From positions 62,001 through 126,000 of the forward strand of contig OZ025734.1 in NCBI GenBank assembly GCA_964019335.1: a DNA stretch of 64,000 nucleotides, in the 5' to 3' direction. Positions 17,667 through 31,788 of the stretch are shown here, one piece after another. How positions within the stretch are numbered: position 1 is the first letter of the stretch; every line of letters starts with the position of its first letter. A program made the position numbers and the translations under genes. Origin of the DNA: Diplonema japonicum (Eukaryota > Protista > Euglenozoa: Diplonemea). The notes below the pieces were generated by a model. That model searched no databases. It saw nothing but the letters and a program-made list of their open reading frames with translations, and had not been told where the DNA came from.

Positions 17667-18024
17667 TTCTTTTTTTTTTCTCTTTTTTTTTTCTTTTCCC
17701 TCCCTTTATTCATCATTCCCCCCCCCCCCCCCCCCCCCTCCTCCGGCTTATAGAAAACTAAAACGGAAAAAAAATCGAAAAGAAGATAATAAAAAAAAAG
17801 AGCTATAAAGGGGTCATAGAAAAAGGAAGCGAGCCGCATCCCCCAAAAATGCCTTTCCCCCCTCACAAAACAGCAAGCTTTTTTTCCCCCCCTTCTTTTT
17901 TGTTTCCCTTTTTTTTTTTTTACCCGTATTCCTAATGAAAGGTAAGGGGAGAAAAGAATAGAGGGGAGAAGTATAAACAACGCACCCTCTTTTTTTTTCT
18001 TTTTTCTTTCAAAAAAAAAAAAAT

Positions 18025-18325
18025 GGGGCTTTGATTGCAACACTAGGTGGCGTTAAGCGTGCAATGAAGCACGAACTACCTACTTGATTACAGGGGGCGC
18101 TCCTCGGCCGAGCAGTGTCCTTAATGCGTGCGGTGTGCTCAACCCTAGCCGGGGCGTCCCGGGTAACCAAGATTCTGCGCTCGTGCAGTTTGCTGCCTGT
18201 TCGTCACCCTGAGTATCTGCGTTACGTTCTTCCACTCAGGCGCTACCGGTGATGACCGACGAGGAGGTCAACAGCGAACAACACATCTGATGTACTTCTT
18301 ATATTTCCATGTTATCCCCACCACC
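18025..18325 (-). mobile_element. Repeat A copy 1: ~300-bp SINE-like element headed by an HDV-like ribozyme
   Basis: Homologous to 24021-24263 and 27662-27917. The 5' end sits at a T-tract-AG junction and no credible ORF is present. Confidence 0.75.
18188..18325 (-). ncRNA. HDV-like self-cleaving ribozyme, family A (apparently complete)
   Basis: P1 GGUGGUG/CAUCACC; long J1/2; P2 GCUGUUG/CAGGCAGC (one bulge); P3 ACC/GGU; L3 UCCUCGUC; P1.1 CC/GG; P4 CCUGAGU/ACUCAGG; J4/2 ACGAA with the putative catalytic C at 18203. Confidence 0.75.
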
Positions 18326-18360
<35 letters not shown>

Positions 18361-19462: not shown

Positions 19463-19530
19463 GCTACAAACTAACATTAAGGGACAACGTTGTGTTATCA
19501 AAACGAGAAAAACAAAAAAAAATATATGAG

Positions 19531-21609
19531 TTAAAGGAAGTCTTTGTGAGACGCCCCCTTGTTCTCATCTTCTACCTGCACCTATCCCCTTTCAGCAGCG
19601 GTTTCTCCTCCTTTGGTGGTCTTGCCGGCCTTCTCCCCAGCCTGGCCGCTCTTTCTCTTCGTTCTCTCGCCCATTGTCCTTTCAACGCCTCTAGGTCTTG
19701 CTTGGTCTTCGGTGATGCAAATATCGCCCTCCTGTTCCATCCGATCACCGCCTTTGTCCTCCCGATGGATCGTAGTGTGTGCACCCTTGTGCTCGGCTCA
19801 GCTGGGAAGGCCCTCCTTCCTTTCACCTTCTTCAGTACCCTCCCTAGCTCCCATGTGTGCCAGATCTTCTTCATCAGTCCATGCAATCTCCTCGCTTTCT
19901 GCTGTACTTCTGCGAGATCCCCCAGCTTCCCTCCAAGGGTCTTCCCGGTCACGTTCTCGAAATCCAGTGCCAGCTCCACCGTCGACACTGATGTGTTTCT
20001 GCTGCCTGCATACCAGCGCAGTTGCCGCATCCACCTCAGCACCTCCTTCGTGTACTCACGTAGGACATCCCCTGCCGGTAGCTTGCCGAAGTCCTTGTCC
20101 GACGGTACTGGGTGTTCTTGACCTTGTGTGATCTCCAGCCACTGGTGTGTGTGGTACACCTCCTGCCTCTTCGCTTGTAGGGCTGCGTCCCGCTCCCCCA
20201 CCACCGCCAGCAGGTACCTCTGCGTTCCTTCGAGCCTTTCCCTGACATCCTTCCCTGCTCCCCTTGGCAGGATGCCATGCAGCTTCGTACACGGTTCCAG
20301 CCCCCTGCGCGTCATGCCTTCGTGTTCTTCCCGCTGTTGCACTTCCTTGGCCTTTTCGCACTCCCACAGTGCGTGCTCCAGCATGTTGGGCAGCTGTTGC
20401 TCCTGACCGCAGATGTCGCAGTGTGCCGTCGTGGGTTCGGCCTGCTTAGCCTCTTGCTTCCTCGCCTCCGCAATCAGCCACTTTTCGGTGTCCTGTCCTT
20501 TCTCTTCTTCTTCTTCTTGTTCATCTTCAGCCTCGTCTTCATCCTCGTCTTCTTCTCCTTCCGCCATCGGGATGTGCTCCACCGTGTCCGTGCGCCATCC
20601 CCGTGGGTTGATGTAGAACACTGCCCCCGAGATGATCCTTCGCACGTCCCTTGCTGCAATCGGGTCCGTCACCACCAGCTTCCTCCACAGCGCGTTGGTC
20701 TCCGCTGCTGCCGCAGCTTCCATGCCCCCATGGTGCTCCGTTTGCTCATGATTTCCTGTGCTTCCGCCCGCCTGAGTCGGTCCCTGATGTAGTGCTTGTA
20801 GGGCTCCTTTTCCAGTGCGTGGGTGTCCTTCAGCTGTGCCCAGCTTAACTTGATCTGAGGCAGCCACCTTTCCATCATGATGCCCACCGGTCCCAGCGGT
20901 ATCTTCTTCCCGCTGTACCGTTTGGCAATGGCGTCGCAGCGTGTCCACAGCTTGTCGTCCTTCTTGCAGGCTCTGTATAGGAGCATAAGTGCCCTGTATG
21001 CGGCTGTCATCTGTGGGTGGCTCGTGTGTCCCGGCAGTGTCACGGATAGTACTGTGCCTGGGTTCCTGGTGCAGTACTTCTGCCCCCAGAGCGCGTACGT
21101 GGTCTCCTTCACCAGCGTGGCCATTTGTCCCGTTTTCGGCGGTGAGAATGGGCAGTCGTAGAGGCAGCTCGGTAGGATCGTGCTGCTGATGATCTTCGCC
21201 TTCTGCTGAAAGGACAACGGCGTTGCTCCCAGCCTGCTCGCGTCCCGAGTGCCTCCGCCGTCCTGTCGCCGTTGGTTTGCGGCCTGCCGTCTGTCCGCAG
21301 CTTGGCTCCCAGTACTCCTACAGTCCGTGTCGGCTGCAGTTCCTCGCCTTTCACCTTCACCTCCGGTGTCTTCCTGTTCACTGCAAAGGTCTTCGTCTTC
21401 CTGGTGTTGAGCTTCATCCCCACCTGTTTGCAGAAGGCTTCCACTGCGTCTACGCCTTCCTGCAACGCCGCACCGAGCCGTGCCAAGAGGTATGCATCGT
21501 CCGCGTAAGACAGCGAGCGGACCCCTGTGTCGTTCTCCACCTGCTTCATTAGTACCGCCAACAGCGCGTTGATGAGTACCACTGAAATCGGGCATCCCTG
21601 AAGGATTCC
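19531..21609 (-). mobile_element. 5'-truncated non-LTR retrotransposon (RT C-terminal half plus CCHC zinc finger), frameshifted
   Basis: Begins at GILQGCPIS and continues through SYADD, GMKLNTRKT and VGVLG. Two frame changes follow, then CDICG...LEHALWEC, with a stop at 19572. Direct repeat A9TATATGAG (19514-19530) and A12TATATGAG (21610-21629) is interpreted as a target-site duplication. Confidence 0.9.
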
Positions 21610-22435: not shown

Positions 22436-23344
22436 TCAAACCACGCCCACAGTGATCGTGATGGCCGTGTTCCCGTTCGCCTTATGTTTCGGGTAGGCTC
22501 TCTCTGGCGACCTGAACGAAGGGGGAGAATACGAAGGACCAGGAGGAGAATACGAAGGACCAAGAGGAGAATGGAATGACGGGGGAGAAGTCTCTTCTTT
22601 GGGAGGAGGCGGAGGTGGCGGCAACAGCACCGCCTCTTTCGGCGGCGGGGAAGAATAAACTGGACTCTGCGCTTCTTGCACTTGCTGCCCTTGAACCAAA
22701 GACTCCGCAGGAGAACCAAAATTAGGCACAGCCTGCTGCTCACCAGTCCCAAGCGGAGAAGGAGAAGTAGGTGGGGAAGGTTCCCTACAGGCATTTATAG
22801 TCTGATTAATCTCATCATTAGAAGCCCATCTTTTTTTCTTCTCCAAAGGTGTTACGTAGTCCGTGCGCTTCCTCAAATCCTCTGATGAGCACAACGGTTG
22901 CCCGTTACCTATTTGACTGAACTCACAGTCTCCTTTGGACTGAGCAACACTAGCTTTCAAAATGTCTTCGAATTGTTGAATATTGCTCCCCTCTGGGCGG
23001 TTCCGCCTGTCGTCCCTCACCCTGAAGAGGATGACCGGTTCGGAAGGGTCCTTTGTGGTGATGCAGACCTCGCTGCTGCATGGCGTCTTGTCCGTTGTGT
23101 CCAAAGGGTTCAGCTGTTTAGCCTTCACAGTTGCCAAGTCCTGTAGTTTTATGACCCTTCTAATGTCGCCGTCGGGCATCACAATAAACAGGAACCCTGT
23201 TGATATCAAAACCAGCCTCTTTTGTCGCTTGTTCTTGCTCGAAATCTGCATCACCACCCATGCTAGAACGGTGGTGTCCTTCACCGCTCGCAGTGGTTTT
23301 AGGTACTCCGGGTGGATCTGGACTGGGGTGAGTTGAGCGGGCAT
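22436..23344 (-). CDS. PH-like domain protein with a Pro/Ser-rich tail; paralog of 18373-19197
   Basis: VLAWVVMQISSKNKRQKRLVLIS...GDIRRVI; shares an identical 135-bp block with its paralog. The 3' end may continue through further small exons. Confidence 0.7.
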   Translation of the reverse strand: MPAQLTPVQIHPEYLKPLRAVKDTTVLAWVVMQISSKNKRQKRLVLISTGFLFIVMPDGDIRRVIKLQDLATVKAKQLNPLDTTDKTPCSSEVCITTKDPSEPVILFRVRDDRRNRPEGSNIQQFEDILKASVAQSKGDCEFSQIGNGQPLCSSEDLRKRTDYVTPLEKKKRWASNDEINQTINACREPSPPTSPSPLGTGEQQAVPNFGSPAESLVQGQQVQEAQSPVYSSPPPKEAVLLPPPPPPPKEETSPPSFHSPLGPSYSPPGPSYSPPSFRSPERAYPKHKANGNTAITITVGVV

Positions 23345-23517
23345 TACTTTTTTTTTTTTTTTTTTTCTTTTTTTTTTTCCCCCCGCCCCCTTCCCTCCCC
23401 CCCCCACCGCCCCCTCTAGTTTGTTGGTGACATGGTTTCAAAAAAAAAAAAAAAAAAGAAAATGAGATGGGAGGAATGGGAAAAAAAAAAAAGAGGGGGA
23501 AAAAAATGGAGTTTGAG

Positions 23518-23551
23518 TTAAAAGGAGGTCTTTGTGAGACACCCTCCCTTT
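23518..23551 (-). mobile_element. Isolated 3'-terminal stem-loop of the LINE family
   Basis: AAAGGGAGGGTGTCTCACAAAGACCTCCTTTTAA followed by CTCA, matching the LINE 3' end GGGGGCGTCTCACAAAGACTTCCTTTAA followed by CTCA. Confidence 0.7.
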
Positions 23552-23981
23552 CTCTATTGTAATCAGAGAAGAAAAAAAAAAAAAAAAAAGAAGGAAGAAA
23601 AAAAAAAGTCTTGAAAGATTGATATGAGATCTTCGCGCAGGGAGGGGGGGTGGACAACGGTTTGCAGTGTCTGTCACTCTCAATGGATAAAACAAAAGTG
23701 CCGACACTTTTTTTTTTTTTTTTCCTTTCCCATTGCCCCGCTAATGGACTCTTTGTTTCTTTAAAAACAAAAACAAAAAAATAAAAAAGAAACGAAAAAA
23801 CCTGATCCATCCCAGGTAGTGTGTGTAACCCATCCTTTAGGAACATGCTCTGTATATATGAGAGGCAAAAAAAGGAGAAAAAAGAGAAAAGAGCACAAAA
23901 AAAAAAAAAAAAAGGTTTTTTCTTTTTGAGCTGCCGAGAGAGGAAGGAGAAAGGGAAGAAGAAGAAAAAAAAAAATATGAG

Positions 23982-24300
23982 TTAAAAGATGTCTTTGTGA
24001 GACCTTTGTATTAAAAAAAAGGGGGGCTTTGATTGCAACATTAAGTGGCGTTAAGTGTGCAACGAAGGATGAAGCTATCTACTTGATTACAGGGGGCGCA
24101 CCTCGGCCGAGCAGTAGCTTCTTCCTTAATGCGTGCGGTGTGCAACTCAACCCTAGCCGGGGCGACCGGGTAATTATGTGCTACCGGTGATGACCGACGA
24201 GGAGGTCAACAGCGAACAACACATCTGATGTACTTCTTATATTTCCATGCTACCCCTACCACCAATAAAGTACAGAATCTGTAGCTTTAGAATCGTTGGT
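23982..24300 (-). mobile_element. Repeat A copy 2: retroposed unit of SL exon + ribozyme head (P4/J4/2 deleted) + body + LINE 3' tail
   Basis: SL at 24263-24300, repeat A body at 24021-24263, and tail GGTCTCACAAAGACATCTTTTAA at 23982-24004. Flanks are A11TATGAG and A17GAG. Confidence 0.8.
24263..24300 (-). other. Spliced-leader (mini-exon) sequence, diplonemid type
   Basis: ACCAACGATTCTAAAGCTACAGATTCTGTACTTTATTG closely matches the Diplonema SL as I recall it (AACCAACGATTTAAAAGCTACAGTTTCTGTACTTTATTG), including the 3' end TCTGTACTTTATTG shared with kinetoplastids. Confidence 0.9.
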
Positions 24301-24391
24301 AAAAAAAAAAAAAAAAAGAGTCAGTTTTTAGCATCAAGTAGTGGTACTTGTCAAAAATGAAAAAAAGGGTACAAAAGCTTTTTTTTTTTCT

Positions 24392-27178: not shown

Positions 27179-27661
27179 TTAGTATTACTACTGTAAACAA
27201 AAAAAAAAAAAAAAAAACCAAGAAAATCGAATCACAGGGGAAGAAAAACAAAAACAAAAATTCCTCTAGAAAAAAAAGTGGGGGGGGGGAATAGATACAC
27301 TCCTAAAAACGCGGGGAAAAAAAAATCACAAAATCATTCTTGTGGGCAAAAAAAGAAAAAAAAAAAGAGGTGAGGTGACAAGGGGAACAATTTCCTCCCT
27401 CATCTTCATGTACCCCTCTTCTGCAGGACAGCTTGAGATAATAAAATAATTTAAAGTCCAAAGTTGGTTTTTTTTTAAAATCGAAAAAAAAAAAAAAAAA
27501 AAAAAAGTCCTATGATTTTCCTATTCCCAAATCCTTGTATACAGTATTGCGTTTTTTTTCTTTTTTCTTTTTCCTCCTCCCCCTTTTCTTTTCTTGTTCA
27601 ATTTTACGGAGAGGGCCGAAGAAGGCCTCGAGTGACATTTTTTTTTTTTTTTGAATAAATA

Positions 27662-27917
27662 GGGGCCTTGATTGCGACTCTAAGTGGCGTTAAGTGTGCA
27701 ACGAAGGATGAAGCTATCTACTTGATTACAGGGGGCGCACCTCGGCCGAGGTGTAGCTTCTTCTGCGTTCCGCGTCGTGTGCGTGCGGTGTGCAACTCAA
27801 CCCTGGGGCCTGTTCGTCACCCTGAGCATCTGCAATATGTTCTTCCACTCGGGCGCTACCGGTGATGAGGTCAACACATCTGATGTACTTCTTTATATTT
27901 CCATGTTATCCACCACC
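27662..27917 (-). mobile_element. Repeat A copy 3 (ribozyme L3 region deleted)
   Basis: Homologous to 18025-18325; begins TTATAG|GTGGTG; has internal deletions different from those of copy 2. Confidence 0.75.
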
Positions 27918-28132
27918 TATAATAAACGAAAAGAAAAAAAAAGAAAAACCCGTTTTTGAACTGATTTTCTTTTTTTTTTTTTGTTTTAACAATATTGTTG
28001 TCGAGACTAAAAACTAGTTGATGGCGGCATGATGAAGCTATTTTATTAGGTAAAATCCCGCTCGTGCGCACAAACAAATGAAGCGCCAAACTAGTTTTTT
28101 TTTTTTTTTTTTTTTATTTATTTTTTTTTTTT

Positions 28133-31568: not shown

Positions 31569-31644
31569 GTTTCCCTTTCGCTTGTGTTTCTCCAAACCAC
31601 AATTACCAGGAACCACCACAGGGAGGTTGGAAACATTGGTCCCC
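31569..31644 (-). ncRNA. HDV-like self-cleaving ribozyme, family B (complete, 76 nt)
   Basis: P1 GGGGACC/GGUUCCU with a G1-U wobble; P2 GUUUCC/GGAAAC; P3 ACC/GGU; L3 UCCCUGU; P1.1 CC/GG; P4 UUGU(G)GUUU-GGAG-AAACACAA; J4/2 GCGAA with the putative catalytic C at 31580. Confidence 0.85.
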
Positions 31645-31788
31645 CAAAAAAAAAAAACTCAAAGTGCAGGACAAACCCCCTCATGGAGGGCCGCCCTTGG
31701 GTGGGTTGGGGGGGGCTATCTATTTATACTCCTTCTGGAGCATTGCTTTCGTTCCAATCGAGGCCTCGAGCAAAAAAAAAAAAAAATT

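What the first reader, a model, noticed from the sequence alone, without database searches (positions are those of the whole stretch)
23965..24321. SL-capped, ribozyme-headed SINE-like retrocopy carrying the LINE 3' tail
Seen on the minus strand, in order: 38 nt of SL, the family A ribozyme head, the body, T8-AATACAAA and the LINE hairpin tail. It lies between A11TATGAG and A17GAG, a degenerate TSD of the same type as the LINE's. Inference: a trans-spliced RNA was reverse-transcribed to its very 5' end by the LINE machinery. This copy lacks P4 and the catalytic C, as expected if only a dead ribozyme lets the SL survive to be copied. Together this suggests a promoter-less SINE/LINE system that exits polycistronic RNA by self-cleavage or by trans-splicing. 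Caveat: copy 1 shows no tail and copy 3 only a weak resemblance near 27621-27636, so a template-switch chimera is possible.
Basis: partly seen in the sequence, partly recalled or inferred. Interest (0 to 1): 0.88.

Follow-up and report, generated by a model that had tools for sequence, protein, structure and literature searches.

The report
Spliced-leader-capped SINE retrocopy with LINE tail
This is a DNA fossil of a short mobile-element RNA that had received the cell's mRNA spliced leader before being copied back into the genome, and it ends in a stray piece of a LINE tail; it is one of at least 14 such leader-capped copies, and it shows that leader addition competes with the element's own self-cutting RNA head.

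Summary
The sequence is as described. On the minus strand it reads T17, then 38 of the 39 spliced-leader (SL) nucleotides with one private mismatch, then a family A body, T8, about 37-45 nt resembling the resident LINE's 3' end, and T11.

- **SL origin:** the true SL RNA gene continues GTACCC, so this is not an SL-gene relic. SL joined to family A recurs at 14 or more loci with unrelated flanks.
- **Acceptor:** most ordinary copies have a T-run plus A just before G1. That forms a trans-splice acceptor overlapping the putative HDV-like cleavage site.
- **TSD claim fails:** CTCATAT is the LINE's own conserved terminus. Real duplications are plain T-runs.
- **"Dead ribozyme only" fails:** 6 of 12 SL-bearing copies keep an intact core, although large core deletions look enriched. 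This copy's deletion junction is unique in the genome.
- **LINE tail:** it is appended after a complete family A end. It is the only such case among 473 A1-type 3' ends. A second SL copy (L040) has the same layout, which favours one chimeric event over nested insertions.

Earlier notes of this scan (s1-858960, s1-858158, s1-855142) had already reported SL-joined copies, SL-headed LINEs and a LINE chimera elsewhere in this genome.

The parts
24301..24317 (-). T17 run directly upstream of the SL. It is the T-rich target or flank typical of all family A and LINE insertions, and it is preceded by CTC.
   Evidence: T-runs flank both sides of family A copies and of 5'-truncated LINE copies.
24263..24300 (-). 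Spliced leader nucleotides 2-39 (38 nt) with one private mismatch (A for T at CAGTTTC). The last G doubles as ribozyme position G1.
   Evidence: SL RNA gene exon. The closest published SL differs at 2 positions (PMC3795323).
24180..24262 (-). 5' part of the family A HDV-like ribozyme head (reference positions 2-84): P1 5' strand, the long J1/2 insert, P2 5' strand, P3/L3, P1 3' strand and P1.1.
   Evidence: The fold was tested.
24171..24179 (-). Unmatched filler (ACATAATTA) at a private internal deletion that removes P4, J4/2 with the catalytic C, and the P2 3' strand (reference positions ~85-155).
   Evidence: The junction is unique in the 62.5-Mb genome.
24021..24170 (-). Family A body with an A1-type 3' end (…GCAATCAAAGCCCCCC). 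It belongs to an older, diverged subfamily, 81-86% identical to A1 copies.
24013..24020 (-). T8 run after the family A 3' end. It is either the U-rich end of the family A RNA or half of a split target T-run.
   Evidence: Every A1 copy is followed by a T-run.
23976..24012 (-). Diverged copy of the last ~37-45 nt of the resident LINE. It contains a hairpin (GTCT, loop CACAA, AGAC at 24003-23991) and then …TTTTAACTCATA.
   Evidence: 89% over 47 nt to 19552-19506; LINE terminus in 30 copies; alignment. This tail variant is unique in the genome.
23965..23975 (-). T11 run after the tail. Every LINE copy has an equivalent T-run, which is the possible target duplication partner of T17.
19506..21600 (-). 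Resident LINE copy, at least its 3' 2.1 kb. It encodes a reverse transcriptase piece and has the reference 3' terminus used for the tail comparison. It is a separate insertion, because 23300-23964 is single-copy.
   Evidence: RVT_1 match, E 1.2e-8, on 21109-21582. 97-99.6% identity to the 29 other copies compared. for the single-copy stretch.
18015..18331 (-). Family A copy 1. It has an intact ribozyme core and lies behind T-run+AGA. It is the reference for what copy 2 has lost.
27654..27922 (-). Family A copy 3, with an internal deletion in the P2/P3 region and no LINE tail.

Best explanation
The feature is a one-off retrocopy of a spliced-leader-capped transcript of a ribozyme-headed, non-autonomous retroposon ('family A'). 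Family A is about 326 nt long and has roughly 440-470 copies.

Shown:
- The SL is authentic and lacks the SL RNA intron.
- The same SL-family A junction occurs at 14 or more unrelated loci.
- Ordinary copies usually sit behind a T-run followed by A. That A and the element's first G form a polypyrimidine-AG trans-splice acceptor that overlaps the putative HDV-like cleavage site.

Inferred:
- A family A copy was co-transcribed with its surroundings.
- It was trans-spliced at AG|G2 rather than self-cleaved before G1. The terminal G of the SL restores G1.
- A LINE reverse transcriptase copied the capped RNA up to SL nucleotide 2.
- The LINE tail was probably acquired in the same event. Either reverse transcription began on the 3' end of a LINE RNA and switched after about 40 nt to the U-rich 3' end of the family A RNA, giving a U6-L1-type chimera, or a single RNA carried both parts.
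- The product integrated into a T-run, the usual target.

The 50-70-nt ribozyme deletion is private to this copy. It may have arisen before, during or after retroposition.
For: SL identity:
- The SL RNA gene has a conserved upstream block, a GTACCC intron start and a T-run terminator at three gene copies.
- The SL 24-mer has 227 dispersed hits, with several distinct downstream classes.

Recurrence and acceptor:
- There are 12 exact SL-family A junctions, plus L035 and L053. All have different flanks and belong to different subfamilies.
- In 22 of 35 non-SL solo copies an A lies immediately 5' of G1, after a T-run.
- Stacked new SL plus relict SL at 7 loci shows repeated cycles of trans-splicing and retroposition in this genome.

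LINE and its tail:
- The LINE encodes RVT_1.
- Its terminus is conserved in 30 of 30 copies.
- The tail aligns to it.

One event rather than two:
- Only 1 of 473 A1-type ends is followed by the LINE hairpin, and it is this SL-bearing copy.
- A second SL copy, L040, has the same order: SL, family A with its own T-run, then a short LINE tail.
- A LINE tail occurs in 2 of 12 SL copies against 0 of 42 non-SL copies, p = 0.046.
- Chance nesting expects about 0.02-0.06 such cases among 14 SL copies.
- L005 shows that this genome also makes chimeras containing unspliced SL RNA.
Against: - T-runs on all sides make the target duplications uninformative, so one event and two events cannot be separated at this locus.
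- 5'-truncated LINE copies normally begin right after a T-run. That is exactly how the tail begins here.
- Five of the 14 junctions keep the full G1 (SL|GGTGGTG). That needs an AG directly before G1, and none of 35 sampled copies has one.
- There is no RNA evidence. Only short contigs were available.
- The ribozyme is supported by fit to the HDV-like architecture only. There is no covariation and no Rfam hit.
- The chance-nesting estimate extrapolates the T-run density of one window.
Confidence: 0.6

Rival explanations
1. Two independent, ordinary insertions. A severely 5'-truncated LINE fragment (~40 nt) landed in a T-run first. An SL-capped family A retrocopy later landed in the T-run at its 5' junction. 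T17 and T8 are then the duplication of the second event.
For: Both elements target T-runs. Truncated LINE copies start directly after a T-run. Family A copies also sit in the T-runs that follow LINE tails (L072 and L040 5' flanks). About 0.5-2 such chance neighbours are expected among roughly 460 copies.
Against: The only A1-end-plus-LINE-tail case in the genome is in the ~3% of copies that carry an SL. A second SL copy has the same layout. The expected number among 14 SL copies is 0.02-0.06.
Confidence: 0.22
2. This is a bona fide SINE subfamily whose own 3' tail is the LINE tail. It is flanked by a CTC…T(n) target duplication, and its SL survived because the source ribozyme was already dead.
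For: Subfamily A2 really does end in a hairpin plus CCTTTAACTCATATAT, like the LINE. Large core deletions occur in 5 of 12 SL copies against 2 of 39 non-SL copies, p = 0.005, with a post-hoc threshold. A C usually precedes the 5' T-run of LINE insertions.
Against: The tail follows a complete A1-type end plus T8, and that arrangement, the tail variant and the deletion junction are each unique in the genome. CTCATAT is element sequence. Six of 12 SL copies have intact cores, and overall lesion rates do not differ (p = 0.50).
Confidence: 0.08
3. The SL was not trans-spliced onto this RNA. Reverse transcriptase reached the ribozyme-cleaved 5' end (G1) and switched template onto a free SL exon or another SL-bearing RNA.
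For: Five of 14 junctions are SL plus the complete element from G1. That fits a cleaved 5' end better than the common AG|G2 acceptor. Chimeras with SL RNA exist (L005).
Against: All 14 junctions use exactly the last SL exon base and none carries intron sequence. The window copy and 8 others have the AG|G2 junction predicted from the common T-run+A flank. The free SL exon is only a transient splicing intermediate (established knowledge of trans-splicing).
Confidence: 0.08
4. A relic of an SL RNA gene or SL RNA pseudogene.
For: GT follows the SL, as at a 5' splice site.
Against: The authentic gene continues GTACCCAATC and has a conserved upstream block that is absent here. The downstream sequence is family A.
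Confidence: 0.01

Closest known systems
L1Tc / NARTc (and ingi/RIME) of trypanosomatids, with the Pr77 hallmark and the L1TcRz HDV-like ribozyme (PMC3185411, PMC4035085, PMC3383444)
   Same: An euglenozoan LINE and non-autonomous partner system in polycistronically transcribed genomes. An HDV-like ribozyme sits at the very 5' end of the element RNA and frees it from co-transcripts.
   Different: Pr77 is also an internal promoter that gives unspliced transcripts (PMC1874656). Here the cleavage site overlaps a polypyrimidine-AG acceptor, and DNA copies carrying the SL exist. The head here is ~135 nt with a 43-nt J1/2 insert, and it shows no sequence relation that I tested. The tails are T-runs, not poly(A).
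SL-tagged retrogenes of dinoflagellates (PMC6050394, PMC5585692, PMC12014239)
   Same: DNA-encoded SL at the 5' end marks retroposed trans-spliced RNAs. Stacked relict SLs record repeated cycles, and they are seen here at 7 loci.
   Different: The template here is a mobile-element RNA, not a protein-coding mRNA. There is no poly(A) tail. The lineage is different (a 39-nt euglenozoan SL).
Template-switch chimeric retrocopies such as U6-L1 in mammals (from my own knowledge: Buzdin et al. 2002; not retrieved here)
   Same: The 5' part is a full-length copy of another RNA. The 3' part is a short 5'-truncated LINE 3' end in the same orientation. The whole sits in the LINE's usual target.
   Different: The captured RNA is itself a retroposon with its own U/T-rich end. 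The target duplications are homopolymeric, so the defining single TSD cannot be verified.
SLACS / CZAR / CRE site-specific retrotransposons in SL RNA genes (from my own knowledge)
   Same: Retroelements associated with SL sequence in Euglenozoa.
   Different: Those insert into SL RNA genes at a fixed site and carry only the first ~11 nt of the SL. Here a complete SL exon is fused at a splice junction, at dispersed loci.

Membership tests
HDV-like self-cleaving ribozyme | Nested double-pseudoknot pairing potential (P1, P1.1, P2, P3, P4) in the canonical order | tested here: met
   On 40 family A heads, 92% of cells pair in the proposed P1/P2/P3/P1.1/P4. Registers slid by 1-3 columns give 24-56%. 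L3 (UCCUCGUC) and the following GG resemble the HDV core.
HDV-like self-cleaving ribozyme | Catalytic C in J4/2 | tested here: met
   C123 lies in GUGA-C-GAA in intact copies. It is deleted in the window copy and changed to U in the decayed composite copies.
HDV-like self-cleaving ribozyme | Evolutionary support (covariation) or a match to a curated model | tested here: not met
   There are no pairs with changes on both sides, because the family is too young. No Rfam HDV-type hit appears at gathering threshold or at E<=10. The 43-nt J1/2 insert may explain the Rfam miss.
HDV-like self-cleaving ribozyme | Self-cleavage 5' of G1 | not testable with these tools
   This needs in vitro transcription and cleavage, or 5'-OH end mapping. 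No raw RNA reads were available.
SINE paired with a LINE (shared 3' tail) | Short, non-coding, dispersed in high copy number, 5' end fixed | tested here: met
   442 head hits and 473 A1 3'-end hits. The consensus is 326 nt, and many copies are 98-99% identical.
SINE paired with a LINE (shared 3' tail) | The element's own 3' end is homologous to the partner LINE's 3' end | tested here: not met
   This holds for subfamily A2 only, which ends in a hairpin plus CCTTTAACTCATATAT. The A1 type, including the window copy's own end, ends in AAAGCCCC(A)+T(n), unlike this LINE. In the window copy the LINE tail is appended after that end.
SINE paired with a LINE (shared 3' tail) | Pol III-type head (tRNA, 7SL or 5S) | tested here: not met
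   No Rfam family matched. The head is ribozyme-like. The element is therefore 'SINE-like' in the sense of NARTc/RIME.
SL-tagged retrocopy of a trans-spliced RNA | A complete SL exon fused to downstream sequence at a splice-acceptor position, with no SL intron | tested here: met
   SL nucleotides 2-39 are followed by family A from G2. The gene's intron is GTACCC…. An AG acceptor is formed by the flank A plus G1 in 22 of 35 source-like copies.
SL-tagged retrocopy of a trans-spliced RNA | Independent recurrence at unrelated loci | tested here: met
   14 loci. The 12 whose flanks I could read differ in flank and subfamily.
SL-tagged retrocopy of a trans-spliced RNA | Poly(A) tail and a clear target-site duplication | tested here: not met
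   There is no poly(A). The 3' end is a T-run or the LINE tail. The flanks are T-runs on both sides, so the duplication is uninformative.
Template-switch chimeric retrocopy (U6-L1 type) | 5' foreign RNA copy plus a short 5'-truncated LINE 3' end, co-oriented | tested here: met
   A second example is L040.
Template-switch chimeric retrocopy (U6-L1 type) | A single target duplication around the whole chimera and none between the parts | tested here: inconclusive
   T17 upstream, T8 between the parts and T11 downstream are compatible with either one or two events.
SL RNA gene or pseudogene | SL followed by the SL RNA intron, and a conserved upstream promoter block | tested here: not met
   compared.

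The most novel reading that the evidence does not exclude
In this euglenozoan, promoter-less retroposon RNAs leave polycistronic precursors by two competing 5' routes that share one phosphodiester neighbourhood. One route is HDV-like self-cleavage before G1. The other is SL trans-splicing at the AG formed with G1. Because the terminal G of the SL rebuilds G1, a trans-spliced element RNA would remain a ribozyme substrate and could remove its own cap and leader ('self-decapping'). SL-bearing DNA copies would then be the escapees. They are enriched for core deletions and are sometimes rescued for retroposition by template switching from LINE RNA.
Probability: 0.3. Interest if true: 0.7.

Novelty: new variant of a known kind. 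Interest (0 to 1): 0.5.

Why it matters
The copy is a physical record of three things.
- A ribozyme-headed retroposon RNA is a trans-splicing substrate in a polycistronic genome.
- The resident reverse transcriptase can copy a cap-4-type SL down to nucleotide 2.
- SL-capped copies associate with LINE-tail chimerism.

Together with the other 13 SL-capped copies and the stacked relict SLs, it gives a testable model of how promoter-less SINE/LINE RNAs are released and capped in Euglenozoa outside the trypanosomatids. In the trypanosomatids, the L1Tc Pr77 promoter-plus-ribozyme model dominates.

Each ingredient on its own is already known: the HDV-like head, the SL-tagged retrocopy and the LINE chimera.

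Tried and rejected
- **Rfam.** A whole-window scan at gathering threshold and a permissive scan of the intact copy 1 found no HDV-type or any other credible family.
- **Covariation on 40 heads.** None was found, so the fold rests on fit alone.
- **Pfam on the long minus-strand ORFs of the LINE.** Only one 157-aa piece matched RVT_1. The longer ORFs are off-frame.
- **The stretch 23300-23964.** I tested whether it is the LINE's 5' end. It is single-copy, so copy 2 is not the LINE's 5' UTR.
- **The abundant SL class GTCGTTCGTG….** I tested whether it is this LINE's 5' end. It has no match in the window.
- **A source copy with the same deletion, the same tail variant or the same A1-plus-tail arrangement.** None exists in the genome.
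- **Sequencing runs and laying contigs.** There were no raw RNA reads, and only short repeat-dominated contigs. Nothing spans the SL junction.
- **SL-gene relic reading.** Rejected.
- **Limits on fetching.** I therefore could not fetch two further SL-family A loci (C13:292879 and C24:264935) or full-length LINE copies.

Full report
**What is in the sequence.** On the minus strand the region reads in this order.
- T17 at 24317-24301.
- 38 nt identical, except for one base, to the genome's spliced leader (SL), at 24300-24263.
- The 5' part of a dispersed repeat, 'family A', from 24262.
- An internal gap relative to full-length copies, bridged by 6-9 unmatched bases at 24179-24171.
- The rest of the family A body, ending in AAAGCCCCCC at 24021.
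- T8 at 24020-24013.
- A 37-nt stretch at 24012-23976 with a small hairpin and …TTTTAACTCATA.
- T11 at 23975-23965.

Two other family A copies lie on the same strand at 18331-18015 and 27922-27654. The tail matches the 3' end of a repeat at 19552-19506 with 89% identity over 47 nt.

**The leader is real and this is not an SL gene relic.** A 24-nt SL probe hits the 62.5-Mb genome 227 times, against 0 for the reversed control. The window copy alone has A in place of T at CAGTTTC, so that change is private.

Three hits share a conserved upstream block (L012 and two in L029, 352 bp apart). They continue as GTACCCAATC…, include a stem-loop and an AAUUUCUUG-like stretch, and end in a T-run. This is the SL RNA gene, with a 39-nt exon starting AACCAACG. 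The exon differs at two positions from a published euglenozoan SL, 'Euglenozoa 14' in PMC3795323.

Retrocopies start at ACCAACG after a variable base. They therefore carry nucleotides 2-39.

**Family A and its head.** The main form (A1) is 326 nt and ends in AAAGCCCCA followed by a T-run.
- Its 3' 19-mer has 473 hits and a head 24-mer has 442.
- Many copies are 98-99% identical.
- Subfamily A2 shares positions 1-270 and then ends in a hairpin plus CCTTTAACTCATATAT and a T-run.
- Subfamily A3 has a third kind of end.
- Composite tandem forms with about 520-bp spacing also exist.

The first ~135 nt fit an HDV-like ribozyme.

| Element | Reference positions |
|---|---|
| P1 | 1-7 with 72-78 |
| P2 | 51-56 with 129-134 |
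| P3 | 58-60 with 69-71 |
| L3 | UCCUCGUC |
| P1.1 | 62-63 with 79-80 |
| P4 | 86-92 with 112-118 |
| J4/2 | GUGA-C123-GAA |

On 40 heads, 92% of cells pair, against 24-56% in slid registers. No pair shows compensatory change, and Rfam finds nothing. I therefore call the head 'HDV-like by architecture'. Cleavage itself is untested.

The window copy retains reference positions 1-84. It lacks P4, the catalytic C and the 3' strand of P2.

**SL-capped family A copies recur.** Exact-pattern searches find 12 SL-family A junctions. L035 and L053, which have point changes, bring the total to 14. The 12 loci I could read have unrelated flanks and include A1, A2-like, A3 and diverged bodies. These are therefore repeated events and not one duplicated locus.
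- Nine junctions read SL|GTGGTG. The window copy is one of them.
- Five read SL|GGTGGTG.

Among 35 non-SL solo copies, 22 have an A immediately before G1, preceded by a T-run. That is a polypyrimidine tract plus AG, with the G of the AG being ribozyme position 1. Trans-splicing there predicts exactly SL|GTGGTG, and the last G of the SL rebuilds G1. The five full-G1 junctions are not explained by the sampled flanks and remain open.

Independent support for cycles of trans-splicing and retroposition comes from seven loci. There, a new SL is joined to the part of an older SL that follows its internal CAG. This is the 'relict SL' pattern known from dinoflagellates (PMC6050394).

**Does only a dead ribozyme keep the SL?** The data give mixed answers.
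- Of 12 SL-bearing copies, 6 have an intact core by my criteria.
- Of 42 non-SL solo copies, 27 are intact, giving p = 0.50.
- Deletions of 5 nt or more in positions 1-134 occur in 6 of 12 SL copies against 7 of 39 non-SL copies (p = 0.053).
- Large deletions of 13 nt or more occur in 5 of 12 against 2 of 39 (p = 0.005, with a threshold chosen after seeing the data).
- The window copy's deletion junction occurs nowhere else in the genome. No source gene with that lesion is on record.

The strict claim therefore fails. A weaker enrichment of core deletions is possible and needs an age-controlled census.

**The LINE, its terminus and the 'TSD'.** The repeat ending at 19506 is a LINE.
- A 157-aa piece (21109-21582) matches RVT_1 above threshold.
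- Its last 25 nt have 452 hits.
- The copies compared are 97-99.6% identical, and many are 5'-truncated at different points.
- All 30 fetched copies end …GTCTCACAAAGACTTCCTTTAACTCAT(AT)n and then a T-run.

CTCATAT is therefore element sequence and not target. Truncated copies are flanked by T-runs on both sides, usually with a C before the upstream run. Where the runs carry an odd base, short T-rich duplications are visible.

The stretch 23300-23964, between copy 2 and the LINE, is single-copy. The two are separate insertions.

**How the tail got there.** The tail follows a complete A1-type end and a T8. It is not that subfamily's own end.
- Genome-wide, an A1 end followed within 34 nt by the LINE hairpin occurs once, here.
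- The tail variant is also unique. There is therefore no tailed subfamily and no source locus.
- That single case falls in the ~3% of copies that carry an SL.
- A second SL copy (L040) has the same order: SL, an A2-type body with its own T-run, then a ~60-nt diverged LINE end.
- In my sample, a LINE tail follows 2 of 12 SL copies and 0 of 42 non-SL copies (p = 0.046).
- I estimated chance nesting from about 452 LINE copies and 1-4 x 10^5 T-runs of 8 or more, extrapolated from this window. That predicts 0.02-0.06 cases among 14 SL copies.

I therefore favour a single event. Either reverse transcription primed on LINE RNA switched to the U-rich end of an SL-capped family A RNA, as in U6-L1 chimeras, or one RNA carried both parts.

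The T-runs prevent proof. A truncated LINE fragment followed later by an SL-family A insertion remains a real alternative (about 0.2).

**Context and earlier notes.** Other SL classes in the fetched loci are 5' UTRs followed by ORFs. One has RT-like motifs (L027). Another locus is a fusion of unspliced SL RNA to unrelated sequence (L005). SL-headed retroelement DNA is thus general in this genome.

Earlier notes of this scan say the same. They report a few SL-joined copies of this SINE (s1-858960), SL-headed LINEs (s1-858158, s1-858959) and a 5S-LINE chimera (s1-855142). They also name the organism as a diplonemid, which I did not verify beyond the SL comparison.

The closest published systems are these.
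- L1Tc/NARTc, with the Pr77 promoter and an HDV-like ribozyme (PMC3185411, PMC4035085, PMC1874656).
- Dinoflagellate SL-tagged retrogenes (PMC5585692, PMC12014239).

My searches and the Diplonema papillatum genome paper (PMC10161547) turned up no report of SL-capped SINE or LINE copies in Euglenozoa. That is only a limited search.

**Limits.** No raw RNA reads exist for this organism in the served runs. The contigs laid were short and repeat-dominated, and they bridge nothing at the SL junction. Two SL-family A loci and full-length LINE copies therefore could not be read. All counts from pattern searches are lower bounds.

Noticed in passing
G000 genome-wide; loci L002-L030: The SL occurs 227 times dispersed, often within 10 kb of contig ends. 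It is followed by a handful of recurrent sequences (for example GTCGTTCGTG…, GTCGTCTGTG… and GTATCGACCG…). Several of these are a 5' UTR plus ORF of retroelements, one with RT-like motifs (L027). Whole retroelement families seem to carry a DNA-encoded SL at their 5' ends.
   Followed up: partly
C8:849420, C12:811876, C20:399043, C58:506924, C76:2341, C83:358324, C102:195398 (L018, L026): Stacked leaders. A complete SL is joined to TTTCTGTACTTTATTG, the part of an older SL that lies after its internal CAG. This is a dinoflagellate-style 'relict SL', implying re-splicing and re-retroposition of an SL-bearing copy.
   Followed up: partly
L005 (C2:150571, +): Unspliced SL RNA (exon plus about 80 nt of intron) without its promoter is fused to unrelated sequence. 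It looks like a chimeric SL RNA retrocopy.
   Followed up: no
L043, L056, L060, L077, L090, L101 and similar loci: Composite tandem forms of family A with ~520-bp spacing differ from young copies almost only by CpG-to-TpG/CpA changes, including the catalytic C123 changed to T. This suggests cytosine-methylation-type decay of older copies.
   Followed up: no
5' junctions of non-SL family A copies: 14 of 35 copies have AA between the upstream T-run and G1, and these bases are usually not repeated at the 3' flank. Their origin is unexplained. They could be untemplated addition, a target preference, or selection for an AG acceptor.
   Followed up: partly
window 31569-31645 (-) and L036 3' flank: A second, compact HDV-like-looking repeat (…CCAACCTCCCTGTGGTGGTTCC…CAAGCGAAAGGG…) occurs in the window and again just downstream of an SL-family A copy on another contig. 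It is therefore also multi-copy.
   Followed up: no
listing (e.g. C7, C28, C19, C20): LINE tails are strongly co-oriented within contigs (for example 19 of 20 on the minus strand of C7 and 13 of 14 on C28). In the window, the LINE, all three family A copies and most of the long ORFs listed between 13.5 and 32 kb share the minus strand. This fits sense-oriented insertion or retention in polycistronic units.
   Followed up: no
A1 3' end (…GCAATCAAAGCCCCA + T-run), 473 hits: The most abundant and youngest subfamily does not share its 3' end with the window's LINE. Its mobilising partner is unidentified.
   Followed up: no
whole window: Homopolymer richness is extreme: 415 runs of T or A of 8 or more bases in 64 kb. 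These runs are the insertion sites of both the SINE and the LINE.
   Followed up: partly
L040 and L129 3' flanks; window ~28036: The sequence after the LINE tail in L040 (…AACAATATTATTGTCAAGAC…GATGGCAGCGTA…) recurs after a full LINE tail in L129. Its GATGGCAGCGTAATG part appears among the unmatched contig ends (loose ends) at window ~28036. This is another repeat that neighbours LINE ends.
   Followed up: no
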